Assembly (NCBI GenBank): GCA_002269645.1
Contig: NIVC01004886.1
Span: forward strand, 1 to 32,363
Length of the DNA stretch: 32,363 bases
Reading direction: 5' to 3'
Source of the DNA: Macrostomum lignano
Lineage: Eukaryota
Part shown: positions 6,748 through 28,086 of the stretch, in pieces
How the letters are laid out: each line of letters begins with the position of its first letter
Position numbering within the stretch: position 1 is the first letter of the stretch
Notes under the pieces: generated by a model
The model's input: the letters and a program-made list of their open reading frames with translations, nothing else
The model's database searches: none
Told to the model about the DNA's origin: nothing
Position numbers and translations under genes: made by a program

Positions 6748-7284
6748 ATGTCGGACAACAGTGCCAGTGCAGGCAACGCCATTAGCAGTTTTGATCAGCT
6801 TCGCCAAGAATGCGAGCTGACTGTGCAGTCTGTGTGCGACAGTCTGGCCAACCGCCTGCCTGCTGATTGCGATTTAGCCAAGATGCAGTCAGCTGTGCTG
6901 GCAGATTTCACCGAGTTTTTAGCCAACATAACCGCTGGCGAGTCAGTTGAAGCTGGCTGCGCTAAACTCGATCAGGCCAATGCCCGGCCGCTTCCCGACG
7001 GCCGGTTGGCATGGCGACCGCCGCTGGATCTGCCTGGACCAGATCGGCCCAGGGCTATCTGTCGCGACGCCACCTATGCCGACCTGCTGGCCTATCACGA
7101 CTGGCTGCGTCAGCACTGCGCCAGCCTGCTTAATGAGTGCCGCGATTTGCGCGCTAATCTACGCGCCGAATTGGCGCAAGCCGATGCTAACGTGATTGAA
7201 TTGGAGGCGCAAGCCGAGGTGCTTAGCTGTCTGGCTGGGTCAGCTGATCAATTCAATCTGGATCCCCGGCTGCTCCCTGAGTGA
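6748..7284 (+). CDS. Probable PMF1/Nnf1-like MIS12-complex kinetochore subunit, 178 aa, no coding intron
   Basis: ATG at 6748 in AAAATG context. The protein is helical with an AWRP motif followed by a coiled-coil C-terminal half, the layout and size I recall for PMF1/Nnf1. Identity rests on the motif only. Confidence 0.55.
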   Translation: MSDNSASAGNAISSFDQLRQECELTVQSVCDSLANRLPADCDLAKMQSAVLADFTEFLANITAGESVEAGCAKLDQANARPLPDGRLAWRPPLDLPGPDRPRAICRDATYADLLAYHDWLRQHCASLLNECRDLRANLRAELAQADANVIELEAQAEVLSCLAGSADQFNLDPRLLPE

Positions 7285-7319
7285 CAATGCCAACTAGAAT
7301 TTGTTCGTTTGTTTAATAC

Positions 7320-7615
7320 CTTTGATCCTGCCGCTACTCCCTGTCTATCAGCGTTTAGACCTTGCCGCTAATCCCTATCTTATCGATCCTTTGATATTGC
7401 CGCTACTCCCTATCTTATCGATCCTTTGATCTTGCCGCTACTCCCTATCTTATCGATCCTTTGATCTTGCCGCTACTCCCTATCTTATCGATCCTTTGAT
7501 CTTGCCGCTACTCCCTATCTTATCGATCCTTTGATCTTGCCGCTACTCCCTATCCTATCGATCGTTTGATCTTGCCGCCACTCCCTGTTTCATCGATACT
7601 TTAATCCTGCTGCTA
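7320..7615. repeat. 35-bp minisatellite, about 8 copies
   Basis: CTTGCCGCTACTCCCTATCTTATCGATCCTTTGAT with period 35 (7441, 7476, ...). Confidence 0.9.
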
Positions 7616-7994
7616 TTATTATGTCACAGTATTGTTTACCTTTGGATCCCTTAATCAGCGGCTCATATACAATCTAACCCTGATTGTGTACTTGTCCTCC
7701 TGGTGTCAGTTAAAGCTTATTAATTTATTACCGCAAGCGTTTTTTCGCGTTAATTACTTTGTGTGCTAGTTAAGATGTTTTGCATTTTGCATCGCACTAG
7801 CGAGGAAAAATTTTTTGTTTTTAGCTTGTTCAATTTCTACTCATTTTTGCTACAGTTTTTGTTATCAACAACCGTTTATTTTCCGTTCATACATAAGTAA
7901 ATTGTCTCAGCAGTTATTCTTTTTGCATCAATCGCACTGATTGAAAAATGAGTTACTTTTTGTTTAAACATACTTCTAGCTACCACCGCTCTCC

Positions 7995-8727: not shown

Positions 8728-9210
8728 ATGAAGCTCGAACTGTGCAGCTTCTCCGGCTTCAAGGTTTACCCCGGCCGCGGCCGCTGGCTGATCCGCACGG
8801 ACGGCAAGACCTTCCACTTCCTGAACTCGAAGTGCGAGCGCTCCCACTTCCAGAAGAAGAACCCGCGCGAGGTCAGCTGGACTGTGCTGTACAGGCGCAA
8901 GCACAAGAAGGGCCAGGTGGAGGAGGCCGCCAAGAAGAAGTCGCGCAAGTCGCACAAGGCCATCCGCGCTGTGGCCGGCCTGTCCATGGCCGACCTCATG
9001 GCCAAGCGGAACCAGAAGCCGGAGTTCCGCAAGGCCCAGCGCGAACAGGCGGTCCGCAACGCCAAGGAGAAGGCCAAGGCAAAGGAAGCCGAGAAGAAGG
9101 CGCAGAAGCAGGCCGAGGCCAAGCAGGCTCGGGCTGGCGGCGCCGGCCAGAAGCAGAAGGCAGCCAAGGTGGTGAAGCCGAGCGCGCCGCGAGTTGGCGG
9201 CAAGCGCTAA
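8728..9210 (+). CDS. RPL24: 60S ribosomal protein L24 (eL24), 160 aa, intronless CDS
   Basis: [62 protein letters not shown] ... APRVGGKR is a clear eL24 sequence. Codons are strongly GC3. AATAAA at 9290-9295. The true start is M at 8728, not 8662. Confidence 0.97.
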
Positions 9211-9870
9211 TAGCAAGCAGACTGGCAGTACAATAGCATAACAATTCGAGGCTGGATTTGACATTGCGACATTTCTGATTATTGTCTATAATAAATTCAG
9301 AAATACACGATGACACACTGGGCAGTGTCAACCACAGATACTATAAACACTAGATAGGCCGCTCAGGCTAATTTTCTGGGCAAGTTTTTTATTCTACTTT
9401 CTGCTTAGTAGCAATGAAAGGAAGCAACAGTATTATTTGCTAAATTAGACAAATCGAGTGACTGTTTTTAAGACATCGTTTTGCTAACGCCATAAACAAC
9501 TAACTTGTTTTGTGCAGTAATGGTGTACATTAAGACGCGACAGACAGTGTGCAATGCCGCTATCTTTCAAAGTGGAGGAAGGGGGGTAGTCTGGAATAGG
9601 GTTAATATCAGTTTCGTATAAGGCAGGGTGAGTGGATCGATAATTTAGGCCTACTGGTGGTGGGATAGAAAATAAAGGACTGCACATAGCTAGCCTGGGT
9701 TAGGGGTGGGGTGGGGGTTGAGAGGTTGTGGGTTAGAAAATTTGGGGGTGGCGAATCGTGCTTAAATACAAGCTTATATAGATGAACAGGACAAGAGTCA
9801 GAGTTAAAGAAAGTTCGAGTGCATACTAGCTTTTCTATCTAATCTTGTACTCGAGAAATGTTTTGATTCG

Positions 9871-11003
9871 AACCACTGCTGTGCTCCCACTTGCACGAGC
9901 TTTGTACTAGTGCTATTAACATCCGAGAAAGAAAAATCCGTTGCGAATGCATAAATTACCAAAAGATGACACTGGCGAAGCGCTGGCAGCAGCTACTACA
10001 GGAGCGTGGATATTGATCTTTATAAACAATTAAATCACGGGGCCTCCGTGTGTTCAGCTTGCACTTTATGGACGAGGCCTACTGCTGCCTTACAAAGTGC
10101 CACGGATGTGCAAGACATCTGTTTTCGCTGGGACGCAATCCCACACCAAGAGTTGATGCTGCCTCGGCTCGTTCAAATAGACCAGCTACCCTCTGTGCAA
10201 AGGACTGATAAACGATGAAGAGGCAGACGACATGTACCCTCCAGTGCTGGGGCCAATTAGCAATCTATCTGCAGCCGAGCCTGCGACTTGCCTGCTGCCA
10301 GTGCTGTGGCAGAGCAACCTTCGGCTACCAGATTCTGCGCCGAGAACAGCTGTTGCGGCTGAAAGCTCTCACCTCTGCAGCCGATTCGCGGGTTCCAAGC
10401 GCTAGAGGCAAAGATCAAGCGGCTGCAGCAACGATCCCGAAAGTGACAGGCGAATCAAGCGGCTGCAGCGGCAATCCCGAAAGTGACAGGCGAATCAAGC
10501 GGCTGCAGCGGCAATCCCGAAAGCGACAGGCAAATCAAGCGGCTGCAGCGGCAATCCCGAAAGCGACAGGCAAATCAAGCGGCTGCAGCGGCAATCCCGA
10601 AAGCGACAGGCAAATCAAGCGGCTGCAGCGGCAATCCCGAAAGCGACAGGCAAATCAAGCGGCTGCAGCGGCAACTCTCGATGGTCAAGGCAAGTGCAGC
10701 GCAGTCGTGCATCCATGGACTGTGGAGGCGTGGCTAGCGCAGCTTCCAGCGGTCGACTGGGCGGCAGGGCGCTCGCAGTCAGGGGTGCTCTGGTCAAAGG
10801 ATGTCATCTCATCAGCAGCTCATTGCAGCTGCACCACAAAAGTCCTGCTGCTTATCGGCTGCCTGTTACGAAACCACTGAGGATTGGCTCCATCGGATAC
10901 ATCCCTGGACCTTGAAGTGGCGCATTCGCCAGTTTTTTTCATCTGTTGGGCCGTTCTGAATGCTGCCTCTGAACAAGGGCGACTGGCGACCCTGTTCTTC
11001 GAC
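9871..11003 (+). pseudogene. Decayed THAP-domain P-type transposase (N-terminal part)
   Basis: Fragments in shifting frames: NHCCAPTC (9871), HKLPKD, AKRWQQL, RVFSLHF (CSxHF mutated), RWDAIP (THAP end), WSKDVIS + LQLHHKSPAAYRL (about 10791-10861), and GRLATLFFD (to 11003, first catalytic-Asp region). Confidence 0.7.
10408..10672. repeat. 40-bp tandem repeat, about 6.5 copies, inside the P element
   Basis: AATCAAGCGGCTGCAGCGGCAATCCCGAAAGYGACAGGCR with period 40 (10441, 10481, ...). Confidence 0.9.
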
Positions 11004-11904
11004 AGCACGCTGCGAGTTTCACAAACAGATGAGCTGATTAAGATGAGAAATCTTTCTATTTTGCTTCACGAATATGGATTATGGAGTATATGATATAGCT
11101 CGTATTTGCTAAATATACAATAGTAGACTGCAATAATATAGCCTTCTATGCAATCTAAAGCATTCACAATGTTGCTTTGAATTGTGGAAAGTATAATTAT
11201 AAGTTTCTTTTTGCAAAAAATCAATACAATTGCTGCATTGCATTCATCTGTTTTTTTATTTTAAAAAAATATAAATAACGCTAAAATGTTTTTACTACTA
11301 CTAAGCAGAAAGTAGAGTAAACTGTCGTGTTGTGAAAATTGGCTGGAGTGGCCTATCTAGTGTTTATAGTATCTGTGGTGTCAACTGCCTGCGATGGATG
11401 GCCGACTTTCGTATTGAAAGCTTGCTTTGGAAAGAAAAAAAAATATTGACTTCTGGTTTTTATTACAATGCGTCATATTTATATAGTAGCCAGAAATAAG
11501 CTAATCTGTACCGAATTTAAATTTACGCAAAATGGGAACATTGTAAAGCAATAATTGGGCATCAGAAATTGATTTATTATGCAACCAATTGTGTCAACTG
11601 ACGCCTGCATCAGCGCGCACTTTCTACTACTTGAAGTAGCAAAAGGCACAAGAGCTCACTAGTTTAGAATCCCTGCGTGATCTCAACCAGTGGCTAGTCC
11701 AAAATGCGAGTAGCAAGTAGCATAAGTCTACATGTGCAGTACAGTTATCACGGACAGCTGGATTAGAGGGACGCTGCACTCAATTTTTTAGTAGCCTAAT
11801 TTGTCTATGGCCAAACCCCATTCAGCGCTATGCGTTCGTTCCTTACCGGCCTCCAGCTTATTTCTAAGAAAACCTTCTCGAGCTGCGCGTTTGGATTATT
11901 GGAT

Positions 11905-12015
11905 TTTGCGCGCTTATACCAGTGCGCGCTTATACTATTGCGCACTTATGGCACTGCGCGTTTATACCAGTGCACACATACCAGTGCGCGCTTTCGTTAG
12001 TGCGCGCTTATACAT
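11905..12015. repeat. Short degenerate GCGCGCTTATACCAGT-type repeat
   Basis: About six imperfect copies. Confidence 0.6.
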
Positions 12016-12276
12016 AGCTATGTAGTTGAGTGCGCTTGCACTGGTTATGAAGGTGCCTCGATGATGATTCTCCACTCATATTTAGCCCACATTCGACATT
12101 AATATTCTCATCATCACTGGGACAAACGGCCATGTATTTCTCTTATCCAAACCAGGTTATTTATCTCGCAAATGTATTTAATTAACACCTGAAAAAGTTG
12201 AGATCTAAAATTTTCTTTCGTGTCATAGTTATTGGTAACTCGATCCCTTCATTAGAAATGCTTTGCTTTATAACAA

Positions 12277-12635
12277 AGGGGGTTGCAGCCTAGATAGGGG
12301 ATTGTAGCCTTAGATAGGGGATTGTAGCCTTAGATAGGGGATTGTAGCCTTAGCTAAGGGATTTTAGCCTTGTATAGGGGATTGTAGCCTTGTATAGGGG
12401 ATTGTAGCCTTAGATAGGGGATTGTAGCTTTGTATAGGGGATTGTAGCCTTAGATAGGGGATTTTAGCCTTAGATAGGGGATTGTAGCCTTAGATAGGGG
12501 ATTGTAGCCTTAGAAAGGGGATTGTAGCCTTAGAAAGGGGATTGTAGCCTTAGAAAGGGATTGTAGCCTTAGATAGGGGATTGTAGCCTTAGAAAGGGAT
12601 TGTAGCCTTAGATAGGGGATTGTAGTTTAGTATAA
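12277..12635. repeat. 20-bp minisatellite (GGGGATTGTAGCCTTAGATA), about 17 copies, abutting the SINE head
   Basis: Direct inspection. Confidence 0.9.
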
Positions 12636-12920
12636 GGGGTTGTAGCCTAGTGGTTAGAGCGTCTGATTCACGACTTTAAGGTCGGGGGTTCGATTCCCGA
12701 TCCCCCAGGAAAAATTTGTGTCCTTGAGGAAGACACTTAACTCTTGCTTTAGTTCACCCAGCTGTAAAATGGGTGCCAGCATTAGCTGGGGTAATTGAGG
12801 GCGTGTGGCGACCCCCCAGTCCTTGGACTGAACAGCCGTACGCAGCCTTCCGATGCGCCGCGCAATAGCTGCGGCTGAGCTGTCGGTTGGCCTATTAAGG
12901 CAGGTGAAATCAATTATTAT
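12636..12920 (+). mobile_element. tRNA-derived SINE, family A
   Basis: A box TAGCCTAGTGG (12643-53) and B box GGTTCGATTCC (12687-97), with a degenerate cloverleaf. The body GTCCTTGAGGAAGACACTTAAC...CACCCAGCTGTAAAATGGGT resembles conserved central domains of tRNA SINEs. It has an AT-rich tail. Confidence 0.75.
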
Positions 12921-13736
12921 TTATAACGAAAACAAAATAATTTGATCGATTATTTTAGATTGTGTTGCTAGGCGGCCACAATAATCAAAAGTTCGTAATG
13001 CCCTTGGCACAATGTTTGCGTTCCGGAAAATTCGGAATCAAAATTCATTCGATTTATGACGGCAATTTATGACCTTCGTGGCCGCAATCGCTTGATGAAG
13101 ACTGAAATTCATTAAAATTCTGATTCCGTTATCAGAGTTTTGGATGGCCAAGCAAATCTCTTGAAGGGATTATCTGTAAGCTGCTGCCGCTAATGCTGTT
13201 AATCTGACTCACTAGAAGGGCTCTGACCTGCCTCCTCTCCTTAAATCCCGCGCGCAGCGCTTGTAATTAATGTCTCCCCTCTCGACTGGAAATGCCGGTC
13301 CAAATAAACAGTCCGCTTTACTTTGCATTCCCCCCAATGGCTGTAGGCAAAGGCTTCAATATATTGCATATTATATACTGCCTGCCTGCAATACTAGTAT
13401 TCAGGGCGGGACACTGCGAAGCTCTGATTTCAAGGAAAACACGGCAGCAAATAGAGGGGAGGATGGGGGGGGGTAAGTGGGGTGGGGGGAAGGAAAGGAA
13501 AGGAGCGATCGGTGAAAAATGCGAATACATTTAGCATAGGCCTTCGCCGCACCGGTTCAGCACTGCGGAGAGATTGAGATACAGCATAAGGCATAGCATA
13601 GAATATAACGGTTCGGCATTGAACAAAAATAGAGGCAGGAAGATGGCTTAGGCAAATTTTCTATTGGCCCATGGCCCCCATTGGATCGTATTGATTGCAC
13701 AGTCACCTCGCCTCTGTAGCGCAGCTGCAGCATGCA

Positions 13737-13742: not shown

Positions 13743-13841
13743 TGCATGCAACCGGCACTAGCCCGGCAAGCCTGCCTGCACACTGACTGTCCTGAATACC
13801 GCTTCATCGGCCAGTCTTTCTTTGTCAAGCAACTCTGCACA

Positions 13842-16800
13842 ATGCTGCTGTTGAGGGCCCTCATTCTGGCTTTGCCAGCTGCTGCGGCTCTGGTGACCTC
13901 TGACTCCAGCTGCAGACAGGCGGCAGTCCCGGCCGACTGCTCTAGGAGGGACCTGCGCCGCTGCGGCCGTCCGATAGCCAGCCGGTGCCAGTCGGCATCG
14001 CCGAGCATGCCCAGGCCTCGGTGGTGCCGTTGCTGCATCGACTGCGACACCGCTAGACTTGGCGCCGATGCCGGCGCCACCGTAGGCGACAAGACCAGCT
14101 CGCGGCGCCAACTGCGACGGCGACTGCGTCGACTTGTGCGACGTCTCGGCGCTAATCGCGACGCAGCTGACGGTCGGCGGCTGCCAGCAGCCCGGCGCGA
14201 CCGGATGATGGAGCAGCTGCTGGATCTGGAGCTGCGCCTGCTCAGCCTGAGAAAACGCAGGCGCAAAAGTGCAAAAAGAGGCCGAAAGAAAAACACAAGG
14301 AATGCAGCAGCAGCTGAGACTGCAGTCTCGGCAGGCAAAAGCAAAATTGGAGGCGGCCGCGGTGCCTGGAGCCCTGGCAGTCTGGAGCAGCAATATTTTG
14401 TTGACAGACCGGCCTCTCAAACAGGTGCGGCCAACTCAGCTGAGAACGGCACTGAGGCCAGCTCAGGCCGGATTCTGGCTTTGATGAGCTATCTGGAGGG
14501 GCAGAGGACGGATAAAGTGAAAGGTAGGTGGCTTGGTGTGTACTATAGGTTCCGGGTTCGATGCACGAGCAAAACTATTAAAGTACTTTCAAAAGCCCAA
14601 AACTTGGTAACCTGAAACTTCATAATTCCTAGCCTATACACGGAGTGCTTTATTATAACAACCGTTTGGGGTTGCTGGGGTTGCAAATTTCTGAATCGCC
14701 CAAGTGGTTTCACATTCACACGCTCACACAGGGTGAACAGCGGCCCTGACTTTTTAATTGTCAGGCATTTACACTCTGTGTGCCCTGGGGGTTGGCCCTC
14801 ATGGCTGTGAATCGCACTTCAACCCATGGGTCAATTTTTCGTTCACAAGCCCCAAGTGAATGAGTGTTTGCGCACGGAATCGAACCAAGGGATCGCGGCC
14901 CGAGAGTCAGGCGCCTTTGCCGCGAGCTGCTCTGCATTTCGAACCTATCGATCTACTCTCGTAATTAAAAAATGCAAAATTAAACAGTCTTCAGTGTAGA
15001 GAGTTAAGTGTTGAAACGCTCATCAACTGCTACACCTGTGTTGTTCGGATTTTAACCTCGAGTTGAAAAAATTGCGCAGCGACTCTGGCAATTTTAACGC
15101 ACTGCAAATTTCAAACCATATTTATAGTTACGCGTGCAGTCGGCGGGAGTGCAGAGCGCGCAGTTGCGTCAATCAGGGCTTGCCATGCAATTTGGCCTGG
15201 CCAGACTATTTGCATAGCAACTAGGTCTGTCACCAAATCTATGTGAACCATTAATTAGATCTAGGCACAGTTTAGATTAGAAAACCATAAACTGGCCTGC
15301 GAAACAAGGACTGTCAGCTACAGCTGACCTGCCCAAAGTGCCATTAGGGGGGGGGAAGTGAAGTTCAGTTCCTGATTAAGTGTAGTTGGGAATTTTTGTA
15401 GTGCTTCCCGTGATAAATTTGAACCGGAAATCTTGAGGAAAAGTTCCAAAGTTTAAAAACCTAACCTATTGACTCAAGAAGACAGAGACAGAATGGATGG
15501 AATTCTAGCAAAATTTATCAAAGACATGACACAAGCCAGGTTGCAACTGCCCTGAAGGCTTCACATTTTTTTCTTTGAAAATTTAATAATCTGCCCCCTC
15601 TCGTGCACATTTACTAATAGTAGTACAATAAAAAAATAATATTCAAACCCCATATTCGAGCTGTCAACCGTTCGCAATGCTAAGCAAAAAAGCAAAGCAT
15701 TCAAAACGAAACAAATGTGGGTCCCGGTCGCATCTTTTAGGCTTGAAAATTTCTATACACCTCCTGTGTATAGCTATAGGGTATATTTTTATTGTGCACT
15801 AAACAACAGGAAGAGAGCAATGATGCCAGTTCGCTGGGGCGAAAGACTGACTCCCTCTCTGCCTTTCTCTCTCACTGTACGAGCCAGCTGTTTTTCACCC
15901 CCATTGTGTTGTAAATAAGCCTATTGAGCGTCTCATTGAAAGGCAACAATAAGGTTGCTCATCGAGTCCATGCAGATATAAGAGGCGAACGCAGTGCAAT
16001 AAAAATGTGCAAAGACAGCGCAGCAGGCTGCAACACTGGAAGAGCCAAAGGCACGCAGGCCGGCCACCGCCATGATTCCCGCCGCGCTAGTCGAAGCCGT
16101 CCAACGGGACAGCGTCGATGCTCTGCGCCGCCTGCTGACCTCCACGCCGCCGTCGCCCGACACTCTGTCGGCTGCCCTGGCGCTGGCCGCCGCCCTGCCC
16201 TGCCAGCTGGAAACGGCGGCCGTCTTGCTGGAATTCGGCGCCAACCCGGAGCGCGCCTTGGCCCTGGTAGCCGCCTGCGATCAGGACAGGCGCGACTGTC
16301 CGGAATTGGCGCGCCTATTGGTGGCGCGCGGCGCCAGCGTCAACCAGGTCAGCCGGCCGGACGGCAAGCCGGCGCTGCTGCTGGCGGTGCGGCGCGGCCA
16401 CGCGGGCCTGACGCGCCAGCTGATTGAGGCTCGAGCCGACGTCAACCTGGCTGAGCCGAATCTCCGCTGGACGCCGCTGCTGGCTGCCGTCAGCATCGAC
16501 CGGCCGGATCTGGCCAAGCTGCTCCTGGATGCCCGCGCCGACCCCAACGCCATGAGCTCGGACGGCACTGCGCTGGCAATGGCCGCCTGCCGCGGCCATC
16601 CCGGCCTCGTCCGCCTCCTGCTCGATCGCCGAGCCGATCCGAATCTCTGCGCACCCGTTGACCCGGATGCGAAACCGGATGCGGACCAGGACGCTGATCC
16701 GGACGATCTGGACAGCTACAGCCCGCTGGCCTACGCCGCCTGCAACGGGCACCGCGAGTGCGTGGAGCTCCTGCTGCGAGCCGGTGCGCGGCCCGACACC

Positions 16801-19800
16801 CCGACAAGCGCACTGGGCCGCACGCCGCTAATCCTGGCCGCCCTGAACGGCCACGCCGGCGTCGCTGCCGCCCTGCTGGCCGCCGGCGCCAACCCGAATC
16901 TGGCCGAACCGCTCCACCGCTGGACGCCGCTAGTAACGGCGGTGCACACCGACGCCGTCGAGGTTGTGAATGTCCTCCTGGCCGACCGGCGGACCGACGT
17001 CAACTGGCTGACCGACGACGGCACCGCTCTGGCCAAGGCGGCCGAGGCTGGCAACGTTGCCTTGGTGACGCGCTTGCTGTCGGCCGGGGCAGACGCCGAC
17101 AAAGCCGACGAGGTGGACGGGCACACGCCGCTGATGTGGGCGGCCCAGTCCGGCCACGCTGGAGCCATCGAGCGCCTACTGAGCCGCGGTGCCCGGCCGG
17201 AGCGCGAGAACTCGGCCGGCCAGTCGGCCATCCTGCTGGCCGCCTGCAACGGCCATGCCGCGGCTCTGGAGCAGCTGCTGAGGCGCTCGGAAAGCAGCGC
17301 CGCGAAGCAGCAGGCGGTCAACGCCGCCATGCAGGCCGTGGCTGGCGACGCAGGCAGGCAGCTGGAGCCGGGCGTGGCTCGGCGCATTCGCAACCTGATG
17401 GAGACGGCTCGGGAAGAGTGAGTGCTCGGTTTGTTTGCTTTTAGCTCTGCCCATTGATACGGGTCTGCGAGAATTGTGCGATGAGCTTAATCTACAGGGG
17501 GCGCCAGCTACAGGGGGGGCACCAGCTACAGAGGGGGCACCAGCTACAGGGGGGGCACCAGCTACAGAGGGGGCACCAGCTACAGAGGGGGCGCCAGCTA
17601 CAGAGGGGGCACCAGCTACAGGGGGGCACCAGCTACAGAGGGGGCACCAGCTACAGGGGGGCACCAGCTACAGAGGGGGCACCAGCTACAGAGGGGGCGC
17701 CAGCTACAGAGGGGGCACCAGCTACAGAGGGGGCGCCAGCTACAGAGGGGGCGCCAGCTACAGAGGGGGCACCAGCTACAGGGGGGCACCAGCTACAGAG
17801 GGGGCACCAGCTACAGGGGGGCACCAGCTACAGAGGGGGCACCAGCTACAGGGGGGGCACCAGCTACAGAGGGGGCACCAGCTACAGAGGGGGCGCCAGC
17901 TAGAGAGGGGGCACCAGCTACAGAGGGGGCGCCAGCTACAGAGGGGGCGCCAGCTACAGAGGGGGCACCAGCTACAGGGGGGGCACCAGCTACAGTAGGG
18001 CTGGCTAGAAAAGTCCAGGACGCTGGCTGCTTACCGACAACCTATTTCACGAGTAGAAGATAAGATTAGGCAGGAAAATCTCATAAATTCCGGGGTGAGT
18101 TCTCATGCTCTCATAGAAAGGCTTGACTAGATTGATTTTCCACTCGCTGTCTTGGTGCCTAAATAAAGGTAAACAAGTCTCATTTAAATAGTCCAGACTC
18201 AGTATTATGTTCACTTGAAGTACATTTGTTGGATTCAGATTGACTTCTTTTCGCGTCATAGATTTTATTTTAAATCCGCTCGTAATTCTTCACCATTTCA
18301 GAGTGGTGGAGAACCAGAGCAACAATCTGGTTGGCGGTCTGGTCTCGCCAAAGTCGGGCCGCTCTGTCAGGGACAGCAGCGGAGTTCCCGGGCCAGCCGC
18401 CGCCGCCTCCGCCGCTGTCGCCGCCCCTGCAGCCCCTCCCGTAGTGAGCGGCACCATGACCCGACTGATCAGCAGCCAGACGGTGCTGCCACAGTGAGTT
18501 CTCAAAGAGGGTAGCTGAGATGCCAACTCTCAAAGAGGGTAGCTGAGATGCCAAACTCTCAAAGAGGGTAGCTGAGATGCCAACTCTCAAAGAGGGTAGC
18601 TGAGATGCCAAAACTCTCAAAGAGGGTAGCTGAGATGCCAACTCTCAAAGAGGGTAGCTGAGATGCCAAAACTCTCAAAGAGGGTAGCTGAGATGCCAAC
18701 TCTCAAAGAGGGTAGCTGAGATGCCAACTCTCAAAGAGGGTAGCTGAGATGCCAACTCTCAAAGAGGGTAGCTGAGATGCCAACTCTCAAAGAGGGTAGC
18801 TGAGATGCCAACTCTCAAAGAGGGTAGCTGAGATGCCAACTCTCAAAGAGGGTAGCTGAGATGCCAAAACTCTCAAAGAGGGTTGCTGAGATGCCAAACT
18901 CTCAAAGAGGGTTGCTGAGATGCCAAACTCTCAAAGAGGGTAGCTGAGATGCCAAAACTCTCAAGGAGGGTAGCTGAGATGCCAAAACTCTCAAGGAGGG
19001 TAGCTGAGATGCCAAAACTCTCAAAGAGGGTTGCTGAGATGCCAAAACTCTCAAAGAGGGTAGCTGAGATGCCAACTCTCAAAGAGGGTAGCTGAGATGC
19101 CAACTCTCAAAGAGGGTAGCTGAGATGCCAACTCTCAAAGAGGGTAGCTGAGATGCCAAAACTCTCAAGAGGGTAGCTGAGTAGCTGAGATGCCAACTCT
19201 CAAAGAGGGTAGCTGAGATGCCAAAACTCTCAAAGAGGGTTGCTGAGATGCCAAACTCTCAAAGAGGGTTGCTGAGATGCCAAACTCTCAAAGAGGGTTG
19301 CTGAGATGCCAAACTCTCAAAGAGGGTTGCTGAGATGCCAAACTCTCAAAGAGGGTAGCTGAGATGCCAAAACTCTCAAGGAGGGTAGCTGAGATGCCAA
19401 AACTCTCAAGGAGGGTAGCTGAGATGCCAAAACTCTCAAAGAGGGTTGCTGAGATGCCAAAAAAGAGGGTAGCTGAGATGCCAACTCTCAAAGAGGGTAG
19501 CTGAGATGCCAACTCTCAAAGAGGGTAGCTGAGATGCCAACTCTCAAAGAGGGTAGCTGAGATGCCAACTCTCAAAGAGGGTAGCTGAGATGCTCTCAAA
19601 GAGGGTTGCTGAGATGCCAACTCTCAAAGAGGGTAGCTGAGATGCCAACTCTCAAAGAGGGTAGCTGAGATGCCAACTCTCAAAGAGGGTTCTCAAGCTG
19701 AGATGCCAAACTGAGATGCTCTCAAAGAGGGTTGCTGAGATGCCAAACTCTCAAAGAGGGTAGCTGAGATGCCAAAACTCTCAAGGAGCTGAGATGCCAG

Positions 19801-22800
19801 CTGAGATGCCAAAACTCTCAAGGAGGGTAGCTGAGATGCCAAAACTCTCAAAGAGGGTTGCTGAGATGCCAAAGCTCAAAGAGGGTTTACTCGTAGAAAA
19901 GTACAAAGATCTGCCAACTCTCAATTGCTGAAAACCTAAGTTCCGATTTTTGATGCCATTTTCATCCCCAGAGGCTTCCTGCAGAGCCTGGACATCCGCC
20001 GCGACACCCTTCGGTACAAAGATCTTTCACTCGCAATTGCTAAAACCTAAGTTCCGATTTTTTATCGCCATTTTCATCCCCAGCGGCTTCCTGCAGAGCC
20101 TGGACATCCGCCGCGACACACCTGAGCCAAGGTCATTTCGGCTGCGTCTACCAAGCCCAGCGCGCTGACGGTCACTACGTGGTGCTCAAAGTGGTGTCCG
20201 CTCCATTTCGGCCCAACCAGCCTGACCAGGCTAGCTCAGTCTCCGAGGCCAACCGGCGCGAGGTCGAACTGATGCAGGCGATGAGGCACCGGAACATTGT
20301 GCAGTTCTACACCGCCCAGCTGGTGCCCGGCTCGCTCGTCATCTGCATGGAGTACATCCACGGCGAGAACCTCCGGCTGTACAGGCAGCGCCTCGGCAGC
20401 CTGGCAGAGTCATTGATCGTCAATTACCTGAGCCAGATCTGCCACGGCCTGAACTATGTGCACAGCCAGAATGTCTGTCATCGCGATGTCAAGTGCGAGA
20501 ACATCATGCTGCAGCTGTCCACCGGCCTGGTGAAGATCATTGACTTCGGCTTGTCAAAGAAGATTCACGCCACTGAAGTGTACCATTCAGGAGTTGGCAC
20601 CCTGCTGTGGATGGCCCCGGAGGTGCTGCTATTTGCCGAGGATCCGACACGTCGTCGGCGGCGCTACGACCCGAAGGCCGCCGATGTGTACTCGCTCGGC
20701 TGCAGCCTGCACGAGCTGTGCACCGGGGTGCCGCCGCTGTACAGCGAGGAGGGCCCGGGCTTCCTCAAGTGCCTGTACCACGCCAAGCGGACCGATGAGC
20801 CGCTGCCCGAGGACGCCCTGCTGCGCTGCGGCATGAGCCAGAGCCTCCGCTCCTTCTATGCGGCCTGCGTAGCCAAGAATCCATTGGCCAGGCCGACCCT
20901 GCCGCAGCTGCTGGCGCATCCCCTCATTGTTGGAGCCGCCTACTGACTCCTCTATTTAATGTATTGTTGCCGACTGACGGACCTTGGCGTTCACGAGTTC
21001 TATTAGAAATTCTGTTATTCAGACTGTACGGCTTTTTATTGAGAAATTTATTCCAGCTGCAGATGCTAAAATATACAGCTCGAATTTATTGTTGGCTTGC
21101 TATCTTATAACTGATAGAATTCAATGGAGAGTGACAGTATTATCAGATATTTACAGTACTATCAACAGTACTATCAACAGACTATCTACAGTGCTATCTA
21201 CAGTACTATCTACAGTACTATCAACAGACTATCTACAGTGCTATCTACAGTACTATCTACAGTACTATCAACAGACTATCTACAGTACTATCTATACAGT
21301 ACTATCTACAGTACTATCTACAGTACTATCAACAGACTATCTACAGTGCTATCTACAGTACTATCTACAGTACTATCAACAGACTATCTACAGTACTATC
21401 TATACAGTACTATCTACAGTACTATCTACAGTACTATCTACAGTGCTATCTACAGTACTATCTACAGTACTATCTACAGTACTATCAACAGACTATCTAC
21501 AGTACTATCTATACAGTACTATCTACAGTACTATCAACAGACTATCTACAGTACTATCTATACAGTACTATCTACAGTACTATCTACAGTACTATCTACA
21601 GTACTGTCTACAGTACTATCTACAGTATTATCTACAGTGCTATTTACAGCACTATCTACAGTAATATTTACAGCAGTATACATCGACTATGATTATGATC
21701 AATTATGATATCTGCGGGCAGAGCAGCCCCGGCAGTTCGTGCAGTTCACAGCCATGAGGGCCAACCCCAAGGCACAGAGAGTGTACATGCCTGACGGTTA
21801 GAAAGTCAGGGCCACTGTACACCCCGTGTGTGAGTTCCTATTATGATTTATTTTTAAAAAACTTAAATTTACTGCCAAGGCATAATAAAAGTTGCCGCCG
21901 AATCTCCACGCAGCCACCTGCCGTTCGGTGACCTGCAGCTGGGACAAGGGCCAGCTGTGCCTGGTAAACATCCAGGACCTGCCAATCTGCAGCTGCGTCA
22001 CCAACGATCGCTGCCTCGCAGAACGGCGCAGACTTCGTCAACGCCGACGCAACGGACGTCGCCGATCGGGAAGGCGTCGAGGTCGTCGGCGGCCGCGTCG
22101 CAACGGTTTGGACGGCCGGTCGAATGTCACGACGACGGAGTCGACGCCGCTGATTAAGCGGCAGTTCTTTGGCCGGGTCTGCGCCCTGCTGAGCGGCCTG
22201 CCTGCCGAGCGCAGCTACACCAGCCTCTGCCACATGCAGGCCGCCGCCTGCGCCAGCGACTCGCAGGTGAGCAGTCAGGGCGGCTGGATTCTCGAGAGTC
22301 AATTTGAGAACAGCACTGATTCTGTTTGAGAACAGCACAGATTCTGTTTGAGAACAGCACAGATTCTGTTTGAGAACAGCACTGATTCTGTTTGAGAACA
22401 GCACTGATTCTGTTTGAGAACAGCACTGATTCTGTTTGAGAACAGCACAGATTCTGTTTGAGAACAGCACTGATTCTGTTTGAGAACAGGCCTAAATATG
22501 CTTATAAAGAGCAATAAATCTGTTGAAAACAGTTTTTTAAGCCTAGATTAAAATCCCCCCAAGGGAGAATCGCCCCAAAGCACAGGTGAGAATCGCCCCA
22601 AAGCACAGGTGAGAATCGCCCCAAAGCACAGGTGAGAATCGCCCCAAAGCACAGGCAGAATCGCCCCAAAGCACAGGTGAGAATCACCCCAAAGCACAGT
22701 GAGAATCGCCTCAAAGCACAGGTGAGAATCACCCCAAAGCACAGGTGAGAATCGCCCCAAAACACAGGTGAGAATCACCCCAAAGCACAGGTGAGAATCG

Positions 22801-23495
22801 CCCCAAAGCACAGGTGAGAATCGCCCCAAAGCACAGGTGAGAATCACCCCAAAACACAGGTGAGAATCGCCTCAAAGCACAGGTGAGAATCACCCCAAAG
22901 CACAGGTGCGAATCGCCTCAAAGCACAGGCAGAATCGCCTCAAAGCACAGGTGAGAATCACCCCAAAGCACAGGTGAGAATCGCCTCAAAGCACAGGTGA
23001 GAATCACCCCAAAGCACAGGTGAGAATCGCCTCAAAGCACAGGTGAGAATCGCCCCAAAGCACAGGTGAGAATCACCCCAAAGCACAGGTGAGAATCGCC
23101 CCAAAACACAGGCAGAATCGCCCCAAAGCACAGGTGAGAATCGCCCCAAAGCACAGGTGAGAATCACCCCAAAGCACAAATGAGAATCACCCCAAAGCAC
23201 AGGTGAGAATCACTCAAAGCCCATGTGAGAATCCTTCTGTCACTGCAAGAAAATCAAATTACAGTCTCAGCCAAGACAATTCACATTCAACCCAAAACTG
23301 AAAACAACTCCAATTAAGGTTCTGCGCCTGTCCAATGGCGCCTGCTCCAATCACGACCCGGAGTCGGAGGCCCTGGAGACTCTCACTAATCAAACGTGCG
23401 CCAGATGCCAGGCGCGCGGTTGGCGCGGCAGAGGCTGCAAAAAATGGCGCCGCAAATGCCGGAGGCCGCCGGTTCTGTCAAGTGACGAATTCTGA
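13842..23495 (+). CDS. Predicted secreted, Arg/Lys-rich follistatin(FOLN)-Kazal protein with an N-terminal IGFBP-like Cys motif; 3 exons (13842-14523, 21914-22266, 23319-23495), about 403 aa
   Basis: Exon 1 has a signal peptide ([16 protein letters not shown]), a Cys cluster ending WCRCCIDC, and a donor AAAG|GTAGGT (phase 1). Exon 2 has acceptor CCACGCAG| (phase 1), FOLN-like TCRSVTC...LC...[11 protein letters not shown], Kazal-like VCA...[13 protein letters not shown], and donor CAG|GTGAGC (phase 0). Exon 3 has acceptor ATTAAG| (phase 0) and VLRLSNGAC completes the Kazal; TGA at 23493-95, AATAAA at 23539-44. The exon 2-3 join is strong. The exon 1-2 join is inferred from phase and from the lack of any other signal-peptide exon nearby. 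Confidence 0.65.
14706..14937 (-). mobile_element. tRNA-derived SINE, family B, near full length
   Basis: On the minus strand there is a tRNA-like head GCAGAGCAGCTCGCGGCAAAGG and a B box GGTTCGATTCC (14876-86). The 3' body is shared with 21716-21834 and 26951-27106. Confidence 0.75.
15977..15984 (+). promoter_or_regulatory. Candidate TATA box of the ANK-kinase gene
   Basis: TATAAGAG about 90 nt upstream of a strong Kozak ATG at 16072. Confidence 0.3.
16072..20946 (+). CDS. Ankyrin-repeat (about 12) + Ser/Thr protein kinase (STE/MAP3K-like) gene; 3 exons (16072-17417, 18302-18493, 20084 or 20097-20946), about 795-799 aa
   Basis: CCACCGCCATG start. The apparent ANK stop overlaps a donor (GA|GTGAGT). 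The middle exon is bounded by TTTCAG| and CA|GTGAGT. All junctions are phase 2. The kinase has [35 protein letters not shown] and DVYSLG. The frame at the start of exon 3 is ambiguous (see findings). Confidence 0.8.
17492..17995. repeat. 18-19-bp G-rich minisatellite (CAGCTACAGAGGGGGCAC) in ANK-kinase intron 1
   Basis: About 27 copies. It explains the GAPATE and GTSYRG ORFs. Confidence 0.92.
18500..19886. repeat. 28-30-bp minisatellite (CTCTCAAAGAGGGTAGCTGAGATGCCAA) filling ANK-kinase intron 2
   Basis: It starts right after the donor GTGAGT. Units become ragged after about 19150. Confidence 0.92.
21140..21670. repeat. 12-bp tandem array (TACAGTACTATC) with variants
   Basis: Direct inspection. 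It explains the STIY and YYLQ ORFs. Confidence 0.92.
21716..21834 (+). mobile_element. SINE family B, internally deleted copy
   Basis: Head remnant GCAGAGCAGC joined to the body CACAGCCATGAGGGCCAACCCC...AAAGTCAGGGCC...GTGTGAG. Confidence 0.7.
21914..22266 (+). CDS. Exon encoding FOLN + most of a Kazal domain, split by an Arg-rich insert
   Basis: The Cys pattern matches follistatin/SPARC-type FOLN-Kazal. It is flanked by AG and GTGAGC. Confidence 0.8.
22301..22488. repeat. 22-bp minisatellite (TTTGAGAACAGCACWGATTCTG), about 8.5 copies
   Basis: Period 22; lies in intron 2 of the follistatin-like gene. Confidence 0.9.
22565..23225. repeat. 23-bp minisatellite (GAGAATCRCCCCAAAGCACAGGT), about 29 copies
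   Basis: Direct inspection; same intron. Confidence 0.92.
23319..23495 (+). CDS. Terminal exon (absent from the ORF track): end of Kazal + basic four-Cys tail
   Basis: Translates to [58 protein letters not shown]. It is phase-0 compatible with the donor at 22266 and is followed by AATAAA. Confidence 0.8.
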   Translation, partial: VLRLSNGACSNHDPESEALETLTNQTCARCQARGWRGRGCKKWRRKCRRPPVLSSDEF

Positions 23496-26276: not shown

Positions 26277-26950
26277 GCTGATGCGCTTGGCGAGAGTCTT
26301 GCGATTAGCGGTAAAAATGCTTTGCTTGCAATAGCGACTCGGTCCGGGAGCTGAGCGATCGACACTGTGAGCTGGCCGTCCAGCCGGCGCCGGTGCTGCT
26401 CCTTTTAAGCGGCCACTTCCCCACCCCCATCCATGATTTCTTGGTCACGAGTCGGTATAGCGATGCTCCGCTGAGCAGGAAGTGGAGCAGGTCTTGGGGC
26501 AATTTTTTGGGTCCTGATTGCTCTCTTCCTATAAGCTGCAGCCTCCTCAGTTGCCCCGGGGCTGGGCATGTATAATTGCATCGGTATCTTTGAAGCAACT
26601 GAGCTACGCCGAGCTTTTTCGAGCATACTCTCGAAAGCAATTTATAAACCGCTTTCGGCTGGATAAATTTGGAAATGCAGATTTCTCATAATTACAATTA
26701 TTCCCTTCCCTGACGGAATTGCCTCAGGTCAGGTTGGTGAGGCAGGTCTTCTAGAACGGAAGGTTTTTTGTTTCCTGCAATTTTCTTGCTAGTTTTTCAA
26801 AGAGCGAAGTGGCAGCTATAAATATACACTGTGACTCAGTTCAGTCTCAAGTATTGAGCTGTTCTTGAATTGGAAGATGACACGATATGGCACTGCACAA
26901 TATACACGCTATTACAGATTTTAGGTAAATTTAAACGTCATGTAGCGGGA

Positions 26951-27106
26951 GGTGGCAAAGCAGCTCAGTGTGGTAAACGGTCTGACTCTCGCTCTGCGAC
27001 CCCAGGTTTGATCAATTTGACCAATCCCCAAGGCACAGAGAGTGTACATGCCGACGAATAAAAAAGTCAGGGCCGCTGTACACCCTGTGTGAGCGTGTGC
27101 GTGAGT
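26951..27106 (+). mobile_element. SINE family B, internally deleted copy
   Basis: Head GCAAAGCAGCTCAGTGTGGTAAACGGTCTGACTCTC, a degenerate B box GGTTTGATC, then the same 3' body CCCCAAGGCACAGAGAGTGTACATGCC...GTGTGAGCG. Confidence 0.7.
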
Positions 27107-27236
27107 TCGTGCCTGCGTACAGCATTGGCGAGGTTGTGTGCTCAGGAGTCACCATGACGTTGTGTGACCATGTCGCCAAAGGCGTTTTGCCAGGATGCCT
27201 GCAAGCCTTCTTCATTAGTGTTACGCGGTATTGTAT

Positions 27237-28086
27237 TATAGCATTTTCCAAGCCAATTGAGCCTAGGAGCAAGCAATTTAACCCTTATTGGGAGAATCAA
27301 GCTATTGAAGACTTGTTTTTAATTGTCTATGGCCCGAAAGGGGGTCTATGGAGCAACCAATTTGAGAATCTGGGCGCGCAATTAATCCTTTTCACAGTGC
27401 TCGTGTATCCTTCACAAATAACTTCACTGAAATAATGTCTGCAAGTAGATGGCATATCAAAAAACGATTGACATTAACACTTTGATTTCAGAGAAACCAA
27501 TCAAAACAGGCAAATGCAAAACCATAGCATACAGTAAAGCCGAGAACAATCGTGTCTCTCAAAACAGTGTTGGACAGATTGAAATCAAACCCGATCAATG
27601 TTCAGAGCTCTTCAACGTCATTAGAGGATTGCTATCCAGTGATAAAAGAAGCAGTTGCATGTGTTGCTCTTCCAGTTACGATGCTCGATCTCCACCCCCT
27701 CGTGCGCGGCCCCGGCGTCCCGTGATTTCATAGCGACGCCTGTTAGAATACACTGTTTTTCTCTTTACGTCCAGCCATCGCGAAATGTCCGCAGCACTAT
27801 CACATTTCTCGATAGCAGCGACAATCAGGACGTACTTTTCGTTGCTTATCTCGCGATAGGGTTCTCGCCCTGCAGGATTCTGCTCAACCACTGCATCTTG
27901 GGCTGTAGCAAAACTTTTGTCACTGCTCTGCTCGCTAAATTATTCGCCTGCTATATTTATGTTTGTTTGCTCCATAGACCCCCCATTCGGGCCATAGACA
28001 ATGAAAAATAAGTCTTCAATAGCTTGATTTTCCCACTAAGGATTAAATTGTTTGCTCCTAGGCTCAATTGGCTTGAAAAAGCTATA
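27237..28086 (-). mobile_element. Tc1/mariner-IS630-like non-autonomous element with about 125-bp TIRs
   Basis: 27237-27360 is an imperfect inverted copy of 27963-28086, with TA at both outer ends. The internal minus ORF 27676..27891 encodes an HTH-like N-terminus (AADISRWLDVKRKTVYS...RARGGGDR), then a stop and degraded sequence (...LDSNPLMTLK). Confidence 0.75.

What the first reader, a model, noticed from the sequence alone, without database searches (positions are those of the whole stretch)
14706..21834. Inverted SINE pair at the two ends of the 7.4-kb host intron could loop out the nested gene
Seen: a family-B SINE on the minus strand starts about 180 nt after the donor (arm about 14723-14817). 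A plus-strand copy ends about 80 nt before the acceptor (arm about 21739-21834). The arms are complementary over about 95 nt, roughly 85-90% by eye. Established: long-range RNA duplexes between inverted repeats can drive exon skipping and are ADAR substrates. Inference: the duplex would bring donor 14523 next to acceptor 21913 and sequester all three ANK-kinase exons, a simple mechanism making same-strand nesting workable. Coincidence is possible because this SINE is common (third copy at 26951).
Basis: partly seen in the sequence, partly recalled or inferred. Interest (0 to 1): 0.78.

Follow-up and report, generated by a model that had tools for sequence, protein, structure and literature searches.

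The report
Inverted SINE pair in flatworm intron
Two copies of a common short repeat sit in opposite orientation at the two ends of a 7.4-kb intron of a flatworm (Macrostomum lignano) gene that contains another gene; they could pair in the RNA, but nothing shows this is more than two chance insertions.

Summary
The window is a whole Macrostomum lignano contig (NIVC01004886.1). The arms are 14723-14817 (minus-strand SINE) and 21739-21834 (plus-strand SINE). They match at 84 of 97 aligned columns. They lie 199 nt after the donor and 79 nt before the acceptor of the annotated 7,390-nt intron of an orphan secreted-protein gene. That intron holds a same-strand ANK-kinase gene. The predicted duplex is very stable (-169 kcal/mol) and appears in the minimum-energy fold of the whole intron.

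No evidence makes the pair a selected device:
- The two arms are independent insertions; B has its own perfect target-site duplication and A an imperfect candidate.
- Arm A matches a third copy outside the host gene better than it matches arm B.
- The only unrelated M. lignano locus I could fetch also has an inverted pair of this family. There it flanks four coding exons.
- Four paralogous loci keep the pair, but they differ too little to test covariation.
- The only canonical poly(A) signal after the nested gene lies outside the proposed loop.

Best reading: a neutral by-product of SINE insertion into the intron's unconstrained spacers. The pair probably forms intronic dsRNA, as inverted Alu pairs do. 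A splicing role is possible but untested.

The parts
14701..14938 (-). SINE copy A, full length (about 238 nt). It has a tRNA-like head with a perfect B box, GGTTCGATTCC. Its 3' tail faces the host donor.
   Evidence: nhmmer family profile positions 7-227. B-box motif. Imperfect candidate target-site duplication, TTCGAAAT / TTCAGAAAT, judged by eye.
14723..14817 (+). Arm A as read in the host pre-mRNA (antisense of the SINE tail). It starts 199 nt after the donor.
   Evidence: Local alignment, cofold, MFE of the whole intron.
21710..21839 (+). SINE copy B, 130 nt. It keeps the family's 5' start (GCAGAGCAGC) and its tail, and lacks the middle. It is flanked by a perfect 8-nt target-site duplication, ATTATGAT (21702-21709 and 21840-21847).
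   Evidence: Sequence, flanks, profile positions 108-208.
21739..21834 (+). Arm B. It ends 79 nt before the host acceptor.
26946..27116 (+). SINE copy C, intergenic and outside the host gene. It carries an internal deletion in this contig and in L004, and is full length in L002 and L003. It is the better sequence match to arm A (90% over 79 nt).
13746..14523 (+). Host gene exon 1 (signal-peptide-like [18 protein letters not shown], Cys-rich). Donor AAAG|gtaggt.
14524..21913 (+). Host intron 1, 7,390 nt. It contains the nested gene, both SINEs and several tandem-repeat arrays.
21914..22266 (+). Host exon 2 (follistatin-N-like Cys pattern, by eye, and the start of a Kazal-like segment).
23319..23495 (+). 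Host exon 3, with its stop at 23493-23495.
16072..17417 (+). Nested gene exon 1 (ankyrin repeats).
18302..18493 (+). Nested gene exon 2.
20084..20946 (+). Nested gene exon 3 (protein kinase domain). In this contig the reading frame is broken by the 112-bp duplication just upstream.
21884..21889 (+). The only AATAAA/ATTAAA between the nested stop codon and the host acceptor. It lies downstream of SINE B, outside the putative loop.

Best explanation
The pair is a neutral by-product of transposition. Two separate retroposition events of a roughly 230-nt SINE family with a tRNA-like head landed in the only AT-rich spacers of this intron that are neither exon nor tandem repeat. Copy A is antisense and sits upstream of the nested gene. 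Copy B is sense and sits downstream of it. Both insertions predate the duplications that produced the four copies of this locus. Because no other copy lies in the same transcript, any pre-mRNA that runs through the whole intron should fold the two tails into an imperfect dsRNA stem of about 95 bp. That stem would close a 6.9-kb loop, as inverted Alu pairs do in human introns. This may shorten the effective donor-acceptor distance or attract dsRNA-binding proteins. The arrangement was not selected for that effect and is not what makes the nesting workable. Shown here: the repeat identity, the target-site duplication of B, the abundance of the family, the in-silico stability, and the presence of the pair in all paralogs. 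Inferred: duplex formation in vivo and neutrality.
For:: B is flanked by a perfect ATTATGAT duplication and A by a different, imperfect one, so the insertions were independent rather than an inverted duplication or a composite element. A-C identity (90%) exceeds A-B (86.6%), so the arms are not specially matched; the unrelated locus L008 (27.6 kb) has two more copies, again minus then plus. They lie in two different introns and flank four coding exons of a NACHT-ANK gene, with a net duplex energy of -63.6 kcal/mol. Together with the window this makes 5 copies in 60 kb; 100-1,600 introns genome-wide are expected to carry an inverted pair by chance; all four paralogous loci keep A, B and C. The homeolog L003 differs by about 1.4% in the 5' spacer, so about 1.3 changes are expected per arm. 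Zero substitutions were seen, plus one 1-nt deletion in B that adds a bulge. This shows neither constraint nor compensation; the only canonical poly(A) signal lies outside the loop; host exon 1 evolves at the intronic rate (7 nonsynonymous and 3 synonymous changes, 1.47%), so there is little sign that precise host expression is under strong selection; the duplex is thermodynamically dominant, so passive dsRNA formation is plausible.
Against: The exact geometry is not common under a uniform-insertion null. One copy in each spacer, on opposite strands, close to both splice sites and bracketing the whole nested gene has a probability of 0.04-0.6%. Given an inverted pair somewhere in the intron's insertable space, my hand estimate for this placement is about 6-20%. 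The density estimate rests on only two independent loci. The published SINE fraction (0.39% of the genome, PMC5730564 Suppl. Table 4) gives the lower figures. Neutrality cannot be shown without RNA data or outgroup species.
Confidence: 0.72

Rival explanations
1. Adaptive loop-out. The stem is maintained because it brings donor 14523 next to acceptor 21914 and hides the nested gene's splice sites. This would let the host gene be spliced correctly across a same-strand nested gene.
For: The geometry fits. The arms lie 199 nt and 79 nt from the splice sites and bracket all nested exons. The helix is in the global MFE of the intron with a net gain of -96.5 kcal/mol. No competing inverted repeat of 40 nt or more lies in the host transcript. 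The pair is retained in all four paralogous loci. The mechanism class is established: intron bridging and exon loop-out by complementary intronic sequences (review PMC7404189). The placement is improbable under a uniform null at 0.04-0.6%. The intron is about 6 times the species' mean intron length of 1.1-1.4 kb (PMC5730564).
Against: There is no covariation, and the one arm mutation weakens pairing. Arm A pairs better with copy C outside the gene. The same family forms an inverted pair around constitutive coding exons in L008, so such pairs are tolerated where looping would be harmful. Arm B is transcribed after every nested acceptor, so the stem cannot act until the competing sites have been exposed for 1.7-5.7 kb of transcription (inference). 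The candidate nested poly(A) signal at 21884 is not sequestered. Host exon 1 shows no purifying selection between homeologs. The hypothesis was formed post hoc.
Confidence: 0.1
2. dsRNA-based regulation. The stem serves mainly as a substrate for ADAR editing or Dicer/RNAi, or for nuclear retention. It would tune host or nested transcript levels rather than splice-site choice.
For: A 95-bp duplex at about 87% identity is long enough for ADAR or Dicer (established knowledge). Intronic transposon-derived inverted repeats form edited dsRNA in C. elegans and are associated with higher-than-expected host gene expression (PMC6239182). Flatworms (planarians) have functional ADARs that suppress the dsRNA response (PMC8797187).
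Against: No RNA data could be examined here. ADAR was not checked in M. lignano. The same absence of constraint applies. Such effects are usually incidental consequences of inverted repeats.
Confidence: 0.08
3. The nested-gene premise is wrong or incomplete. The region would be one long transcription unit resolved by spliced-leader trans-splicing and polyadenylation, like an operon. The 14523^21914 junction would be a minor or artefactual isoform, leaving no host intron for the pair to serve.
For: 38.8% of M. lignano genes are trans-spliced, and about 7% of transcription units are multi-gene precursors (PMC5730564). About 15% of genes are in operons (PMC8629364). An acceptor-like CACGCAG| identical to the host acceptor heptamer lies 14 nt upstream of the nested ATG (16052-16058). 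In the paralog L002 only a 69-aa ORF is called downstream, and no host model. The host protein is an orphan with no homolog outside these loci.
Against: The RNA-seq-guided annotation calls the same host-across-nested model in three of four paralogous loci. L002's failure is explained by many 1-3-nt indels that break exon 1. Exons 2-3 have no start codon or signal peptide of their own. They begin directly with a Cys-rich module that needs exon 1's signal peptide, and the reading frame is continuous across the junction. The spliced leader's own ATG would be out of frame at 21914 (derived from the SL sequence). A TATA-like ATATAAG sits 90 nt upstream of the nested ATG.
Confidence: 0.1

Closest known systems
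Inverted-repeat Alu pairs (IRAlus) in human introns and UTRs
   Same: Two copies of one SINE family sit in opposite orientation within one transcript. They are predicted to form a long imperfect dsRNA stem. They arise by independent insertions, and most are incidental. Such pairs can influence the splicing of flanked exons (Lev-Maor et al. 2008, cited in PMC7404189).
   Different: The SINE family is different: a flatworm element with a tRNA-like head rather than a 7SL-derived one. The arms are only about 95 nt long and 6.9 kb apart. What they flank is a whole nested gene rather than an alternative exon. No editing or splicing data exist for it.
Intron-bridging 'zipper' stems (yeast introns, Howe & Ares 1997; AC/GT-repeat introns of fish and lamprey, Lin et al. 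2016), as reviewed in PMC7404189
   Same: Complementary segments near the 5' and 3' ends of one intron would shorten the effective distance between the splice sites.
   Different: The known cases are conserved or recur systematically, and they have experimental support. Here the complementarity comes from two random SINE insertions, there is no conservation signal, and the loop holds a functional gene.
Reverse-complementary repeats that promote back-splicing (circRNA biogenesis)
   Same: Inverted transposon copies flank exons that carry their own splice sites. Young transposable elements are argued to create such structures largely as by-products (PMC8516420).
   Different: Both arms lie in a single host intron. 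The first flanked exon has no proven acceptor, so a back-splice product is not obviously available. This was not tested.
Transposon-derived intronic dsRNA loci in C. elegans (Reich & Bass 2018, PMC6239182)
   Same: An invertebrate intronic inverted repeat derived from repeats and predicted to form dsRNA. Any function is uncertain and rests on association only.
   Different: Those loci were defined with editing data and expression correlations. No such data were available here.

Membership tests
SINE (short interspersed element with pol III promoter) | Short (under about 500 nt), non-coding, dispersed in many copies | tested here: met
   Full-length copies are about 230-238 nt. Five independent copies were found in 60 kb at two unrelated loci, on both strands.
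SINE (short interspersed element with pol III promoter) | Internal A and B boxes at tRNA-like spacing | tested here: met
   B box: GGTTCGATTCC in A (perfect), GGTTTGATCCC in C, GGCTCGATTCC in the L008 copy. An A-box-like AGCTCAGTGTGG lies about 44 nt upstream of the B box in C (spacing counted by eye).
SINE (short interspersed element with pol III promoter) | Head recognisably homologous to a tRNA (or to 7SL or 5S) | tested here: not met
   ARAGORN finds no tRNA in the window. Rfam gives no tRNA match even at E <= 10 on copy A or on the full-length copy C of L002. The head is therefore tRNA-like by motif only.
SINE (short interspersed element with pol III promoter) | Target-site duplications flanking each copy | tested here: met
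   B has a perfect 8-nt ATTATGAT on both sides. A has an imperfect candidate of about 9 nt, judged by eye. The other copies were not examined.
Inverted SINE pair forming intronic dsRNA (IRAlu-like) | Two same-family copies in opposite orientation within one transcription unit | tested here: met
   A (minus) and B (plus) both lie inside the annotated host intron 14524-21913.
Inverted SINE pair forming intronic dsRNA (IRAlu-like) | Stable intramolecular duplex | tested here: met
   In silico only. Cofold energy is -169.1 kcal/mol, a net -96.5 against the self-folds. 88 inter-arm pairs appear in the MFE of the 7,390-nt intron.
Inverted SINE pair forming intronic dsRNA (IRAlu-like) | A-to-I editing clusters or other in vivo evidence of dsRNA | not testable with these tools
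Intron-bridging / loop-out splicing structures | Complementary boxes close to the 5' splice site and to the branch point or 3' splice site of the same intron | tested here: met
   The boxes lie 199 nt from the donor and 79 nt from the acceptor.
Intron-bridging / loop-out splicing structures | Evolutionary maintenance of pairing (conservation with compensatory change) | tested here: inconclusive
   The four paralogous loci differ by 1.4% or less. Arm A is invariant and arm B has one 1-nt indel that weakens pairing. About 1.3 changes per arm are expected, so there is no statistical power. No other Macrostomum species is available.
Intron-bridging / loop-out splicing structures | Splicing outcome depends on the pairing | not testable with these tools
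   This needs a minigene or transgene, or junction-read counts.
Same-strand nested (intronic) gene | A complete gene lies inside one intron of another gene on the same strand | tested here: met
   By annotation, host 13746-23495 and nested 16072-20168 are on the plus strand. The same layout is called in L003 and L004. My exon model reproduces the host protein exactly. Direct RNA evidence for the junction could not be inspected.

The most novel reading that the evidence does not exclude
The inverted SINE tails have been co-opted as an RNA insulator. By zipping the ends of the intron together they loop out a complete same-strand nested gene. The host spliceosome would then join 14523 to 21914 instead of splicing into the nested exons. 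Such end-of-intron inverted repeats would be a general feature of introns that host same-strand genes in the repeat-rich, trans-splicing genome of M. lignano.
Probability: 0.08. Interest if true: 0.55.

Novelty: new member of a known kind. Interest (0 to 1): 0.2.

Why it matters
If the pairing were shown to be needed for host splicing, it would give a simple and testable answer to how same-strand nested genes avoid splicing interference. It would do so in an organism where transgenesis is available. As it stands, the pair is an ordinary example of something well known from Alu-rich human introns: random SINE insertions create long intronic dsRNA stems. The practical value is smaller. The work defines a SINE family that is abundant in M. 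lignano genes. It confirms the nested host/ANK-kinase gene model in three of four paralogous loci. It also flags a locus where a cheap RNA-seq check could measure what an intronic inverted repeat does.

Tried and rejected
- Rfam at gathering thresholds over the whole window, and at E <= 10 on SINE copies A and C, together with ARAGORN. No tRNA or other RNA family was found, so tRNA derivation of the head is unproven.
- A search for homologs of the host protein. Only the locus's own paralogs were found, so the host is an orphan and gives no outgroup information.
- A kinase-domain search meant to harvest unrelated M. lignano loci for a density estimate. It returned none, so the density rests on the window plus L008.
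- A look-up of an L008 retrotransposon protein to sample more of the genome.
- A covariation and constraint test across the four paralogous loci. Divergence is too low to have power.
- The idea that the pair marks an inverted segmental duplication or the ends of a composite mobile element carrying the nested gene. I rejected it because each SINE appears to have its own target-site duplication (perfect for B, an imperfect candidate for A) and the two copies differ in structure (A is full length, B is internally deleted).
- The idea that copy C competes as a partner inside the host transcript. I rejected it because C lies 3.4 kb beyond the annotated host stop codon.
- A search for competing inverted repeats in the host transcript. 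Besides the SINE arms themselves (I1 and I2, the latter 34 nt at 91%), none exceeds 35 nt or reaches 85% complementarity.


Full report
**Source and gene models**

The window is the complete 32,363-bp contig NIVC01004886.1 of the Macrostomum lignano Mlig_3_7 assembly (GCA_002269645.1). That assembly's annotation was guided by RNA-seq (PMC5730564). It places a 435-aa gene at 13746-23495 (+) and a 540-aa ankyrin gene at 16072-20168 (+) inside it.

I rebuilt the host gene as three exons: 13746-14523, 21914-22266 and 23319-23495. The splice sites are AAAG|gtaggt, cacgcag|CC, GCAG|gtgagc and ttaag|GT. The translation matches PAA46387.1 (BOX15_Mlig029094g4) at 100% identity over 100% of its length.

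The host protein is an orphan. It has a signal-peptide-like N-terminus and a follistatin-N-like cysteine pattern at the start of exon 2, both judged by eye. A sub-threshold Kazal_2 match (E = 0.011) spans the exon 2/3 junction.

The nested gene encodes ankyrin repeats and a protein kinase domain in three exons: 16072-17417, 18302-18493 and 20084-20946.

**The observation**

There are 84 matches over 97 aligned columns, or 86.6%. The ungapped scan gives 78 nt at 82%.

Arm A begins 199 nt after the donor, and arm B ends 79 nt before the acceptor. The third copy is at 26946-27116.

**What the repeats are**

A three-copy profile finds the family at the same three places in every paralogous locus, and twice more at an unrelated locus.

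- Copy A (14701-14938, minus strand) is full length at about 238 nt.
- Its head carries a perfect B box, GGTTCGATTCC. The full-length copy C of the paralogs also carries an A-box-like AGCTCAGTGTGG about 44 nt upstream of its B box.
- Neither ARAGORN nor Rfam recognises a tRNA in the head. I therefore call it tRNA-like by motif only.
- Copy B (21710-21839, plus strand) keeps the family's first bases and its tail but lacks the middle. It is flanked by a perfect 8-nt target-site duplication, ATTATGAT.
- Copy A has a different, imperfect flanking repeat.

The arms are therefore the tails of two independent retroposition events. They are not an inverted duplication, and they are not the ends of a composite element.

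**Thermodynamics**

- The two arms cofold at -169.1 kcal/mol. This is 96.5 kcal/mol better than their separate folds.
- Duplexes of arm A with 500 dinucleotide shuffles of arm B average -58.7 +/- 5.8 kcal/mol.
- The minimum-energy fold of the whole 7,390-nt intron contains 88 inter-arm base pairs.
- No other inverted repeat in the host transcript exceeds 35 nt.

If a transcript spans the intron, the stem is by far its strongest long-range pairing. It would leave about 278 nt between donor and acceptor and a loop of 6.9 kb.

**Paralogs**

The assembly holds four copies of this locus: the window; L002; L003 (also fetched as L005); and L004, which joins L007.

The host-across-nested model is annotated in three of the four. 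In L002 many 1-3-nt indels break host exon 1 and the ANK exon. These are either assembly errors or decay.

All four loci keep copies A, B and C in place, so the insertions predate the duplications.

The most diverged copy, L003, differs by about 1.4% in the 5' spacer. At that rate about 1.3 substitutions are expected per 95-nt arm. Arm A has none. Arm B has one 1-nt deletion of a C in the window and L004, which removes a base pair present in L002 and L003. This shows neither constraint nor compensation, and the test has no power.

Host exon 1 changes at the intronic rate, with 7 nonsynonymous and 3 synonymous differences. Nested exon 1 shows 5 and 5 in 1,346 nt.

**Chance**

The only unrelated M. 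lignano locus I could fetch is L008, 27.6 kb around a NACHT-ANK gene. It carries two more copies of the family, again minus then plus. They lie in two different introns and bracket four coding exons. Their predicted net duplex energy is -63.6 kcal/mol. Inverted pairs of this family therefore occur where looping out would be harmful.

| Source of the density estimate | Copies per kb |
|---|---|
| L008 alone (unbiased by the finding) | 0.072 |
| Window | 0.093 |
| Published SINE fraction of 0.39% of the genome, at about 170 nt per copy | about 0.023 |

| Quantity, across these densities | Value |
|---|---|
| P(an inverted pair in a 7.39-kb intron) | 0.7-8.5% |
| P(one copy in each spacer, opposite strands) | 0.04-0.6% |
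| Introns genome-wide expected to hold an inverted pair | about 100-1,600 |

Suppose the two copies are restricted to intronic DNA that is neither exon nor tandem repeat. Then the chance that they fall on opposite sides of the nested gene is about 20%. This is my arithmetic from the coordinates.

The geometry is somewhat unusual, but it was noticed post hoc and lies within what chance produces many times over in this genome.

**Mechanistic assessment**

The proposed mechanism belongs to known classes. Complementary intronic sequences can bridge splice sites, and they can loop out exons (review PMC7404189).

For it here:
- The geometry and the stability fit.
- There is no competing partner inside the transcript.

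Against it here:
- Arm A matches copy C, outside the gene, better than arm B (90% vs 86.6%). The arms are not specially matched.
- The only AATAAA/ATTAAA between the nested stop and the host acceptor is at 21884. It lies downstream of arm B and outside the loop. The stem would therefore not shield host transcripts from the most likely nested poly(A) site.
- Arm B is made only after every nested acceptor has been transcribed (inference).
- Splicing of host exon 1 to nested exon 2 would be out of frame. This is my own reading of the sequence.

Alternative consequences of the same stem are ADAR or RNAi targeting. These are plausible from work in C. elegans (PMC6239182) and planarians (PMC8797187), but they could not be tested here.

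An operon-like reading of the locus is possible, given how common trans-splicing is in this species. It is disfavoured for two reasons. The same model is annotated in three loci. Exons 2-3 also depend on exon 1 for a start codon and a signal peptide.

**Verdict**

| Reading | Estimated probability |
|---|---|
| Real inverted SINE pair arising from two chance insertions; likely forms intronic dsRNA incidentally | 0.72 |
| dsRNA-based regulation | 0.08 |
| Nested-gene premise wrong or incomplete | 0.1 |

I found no paper proposing inverted repeats as insulators of nested genes in one full-text search. If the idea were proven it would be a modest novelty. The object itself is a new member of a well-known kind.

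Noticed in passing
window 19917-20007 and 20029-20119: A diverged (84% identical) 112-bp tandem duplication covers the acceptor and first ~40 nt of the kinase exon. It exists only in this contig, not in the three paralogous loci. It shifts the frame, so the annotated nested protein stops at 20168 (540 aa). A GT..AG mini-intron at 20014-20126 would restore a 799-aa ORF that lacks three residues (YLS).
   Followed up: partly
L008 12198-12320 (-) and 16377-16574 (+): An unrelated NACHT-ANK gene carries an inverted pair of the same SINE family in two different introns, flanking four coding exons. This is a natural comparison case for any effect of such pairs on exon skipping or circular RNA formation.
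   Followed up: partly
window 27244-27344 and 27980-28080: A 101-nt inverted repeat at 92% complementarity, 635 nt apart. It is stronger than the pair under study. It looks like the terminal inverted repeats of a decayed DNA transposon of about 837 bp lying between two genes.
   Followed up: no
window 8858-13030 (inverted repeat 9321-9376 / 11334-11389): This 4.2-kb stretch, which includes most of the RPL24e coding sequence, has no counterpart in paralog L002, where about 1.7 kb stands in its place. It contains a 56-nt, 86% inverted repeat pair about 2 kb apart, which may be a mobile element.
   Followed up: no
L002 about 7040-7880 and its ANK exon: L002 has more than ten 1-3-nt indels in the GC-rich host exon 1 and frameshifts in the ANK exon. 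These are either uncorrected long-read errors or decay of this paralog. They explain why the host gene is not annotated there.
   Followed up: partly
window 27013-27027 versus L002 20227-20303 and L003: SINE copy C has lost about 60-75 nt of its middle in the window and L004, but is full length in L002 and L003. This groups the four loci into two pairs.
   Followed up: yes
window 16052-16058 and 21907-21913: The same acceptor-like heptamer, CACGCAG|, ends the host intron and also sits 14 nt upstream of the nested gene's ATG. The nested gene might therefore be spliced-leader trans-spliced. A TATA-like ATATAAG lies at 15976-15982.
   Followed up: no
window 21884-21889: The only AATAAA/ATTAAA between the nested stop codon (20946) and the host acceptor lies 24 nt before that acceptor. 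If it is used, SINE B and the 12-mer tandem array would be in the nested gene's 3' UTR. Cleavage would then fall almost on the host 3' splice site.
   Followed up: no
window 13842-14523 versus L003: Host exon 1 differs from its homeolog by 10 nt (7 nonsynonymous, 3 synonymous; 1.47%). This equals the intronic rate, so the orphan host gene shows no clear purifying selection in this exon.
   Followed up: partly
window 17461-18066, 18511-19900, 21093-21673, 22252-23295 and others: About a third of the host intron, and much of the window, consists of minisatellite arrays with periods of 12, 18, 22, 23 and 28-30 nt. Array lengths differ between paralogs; for example L003 has about 170 extra nt in the 12-mer array.
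   Followed up: no
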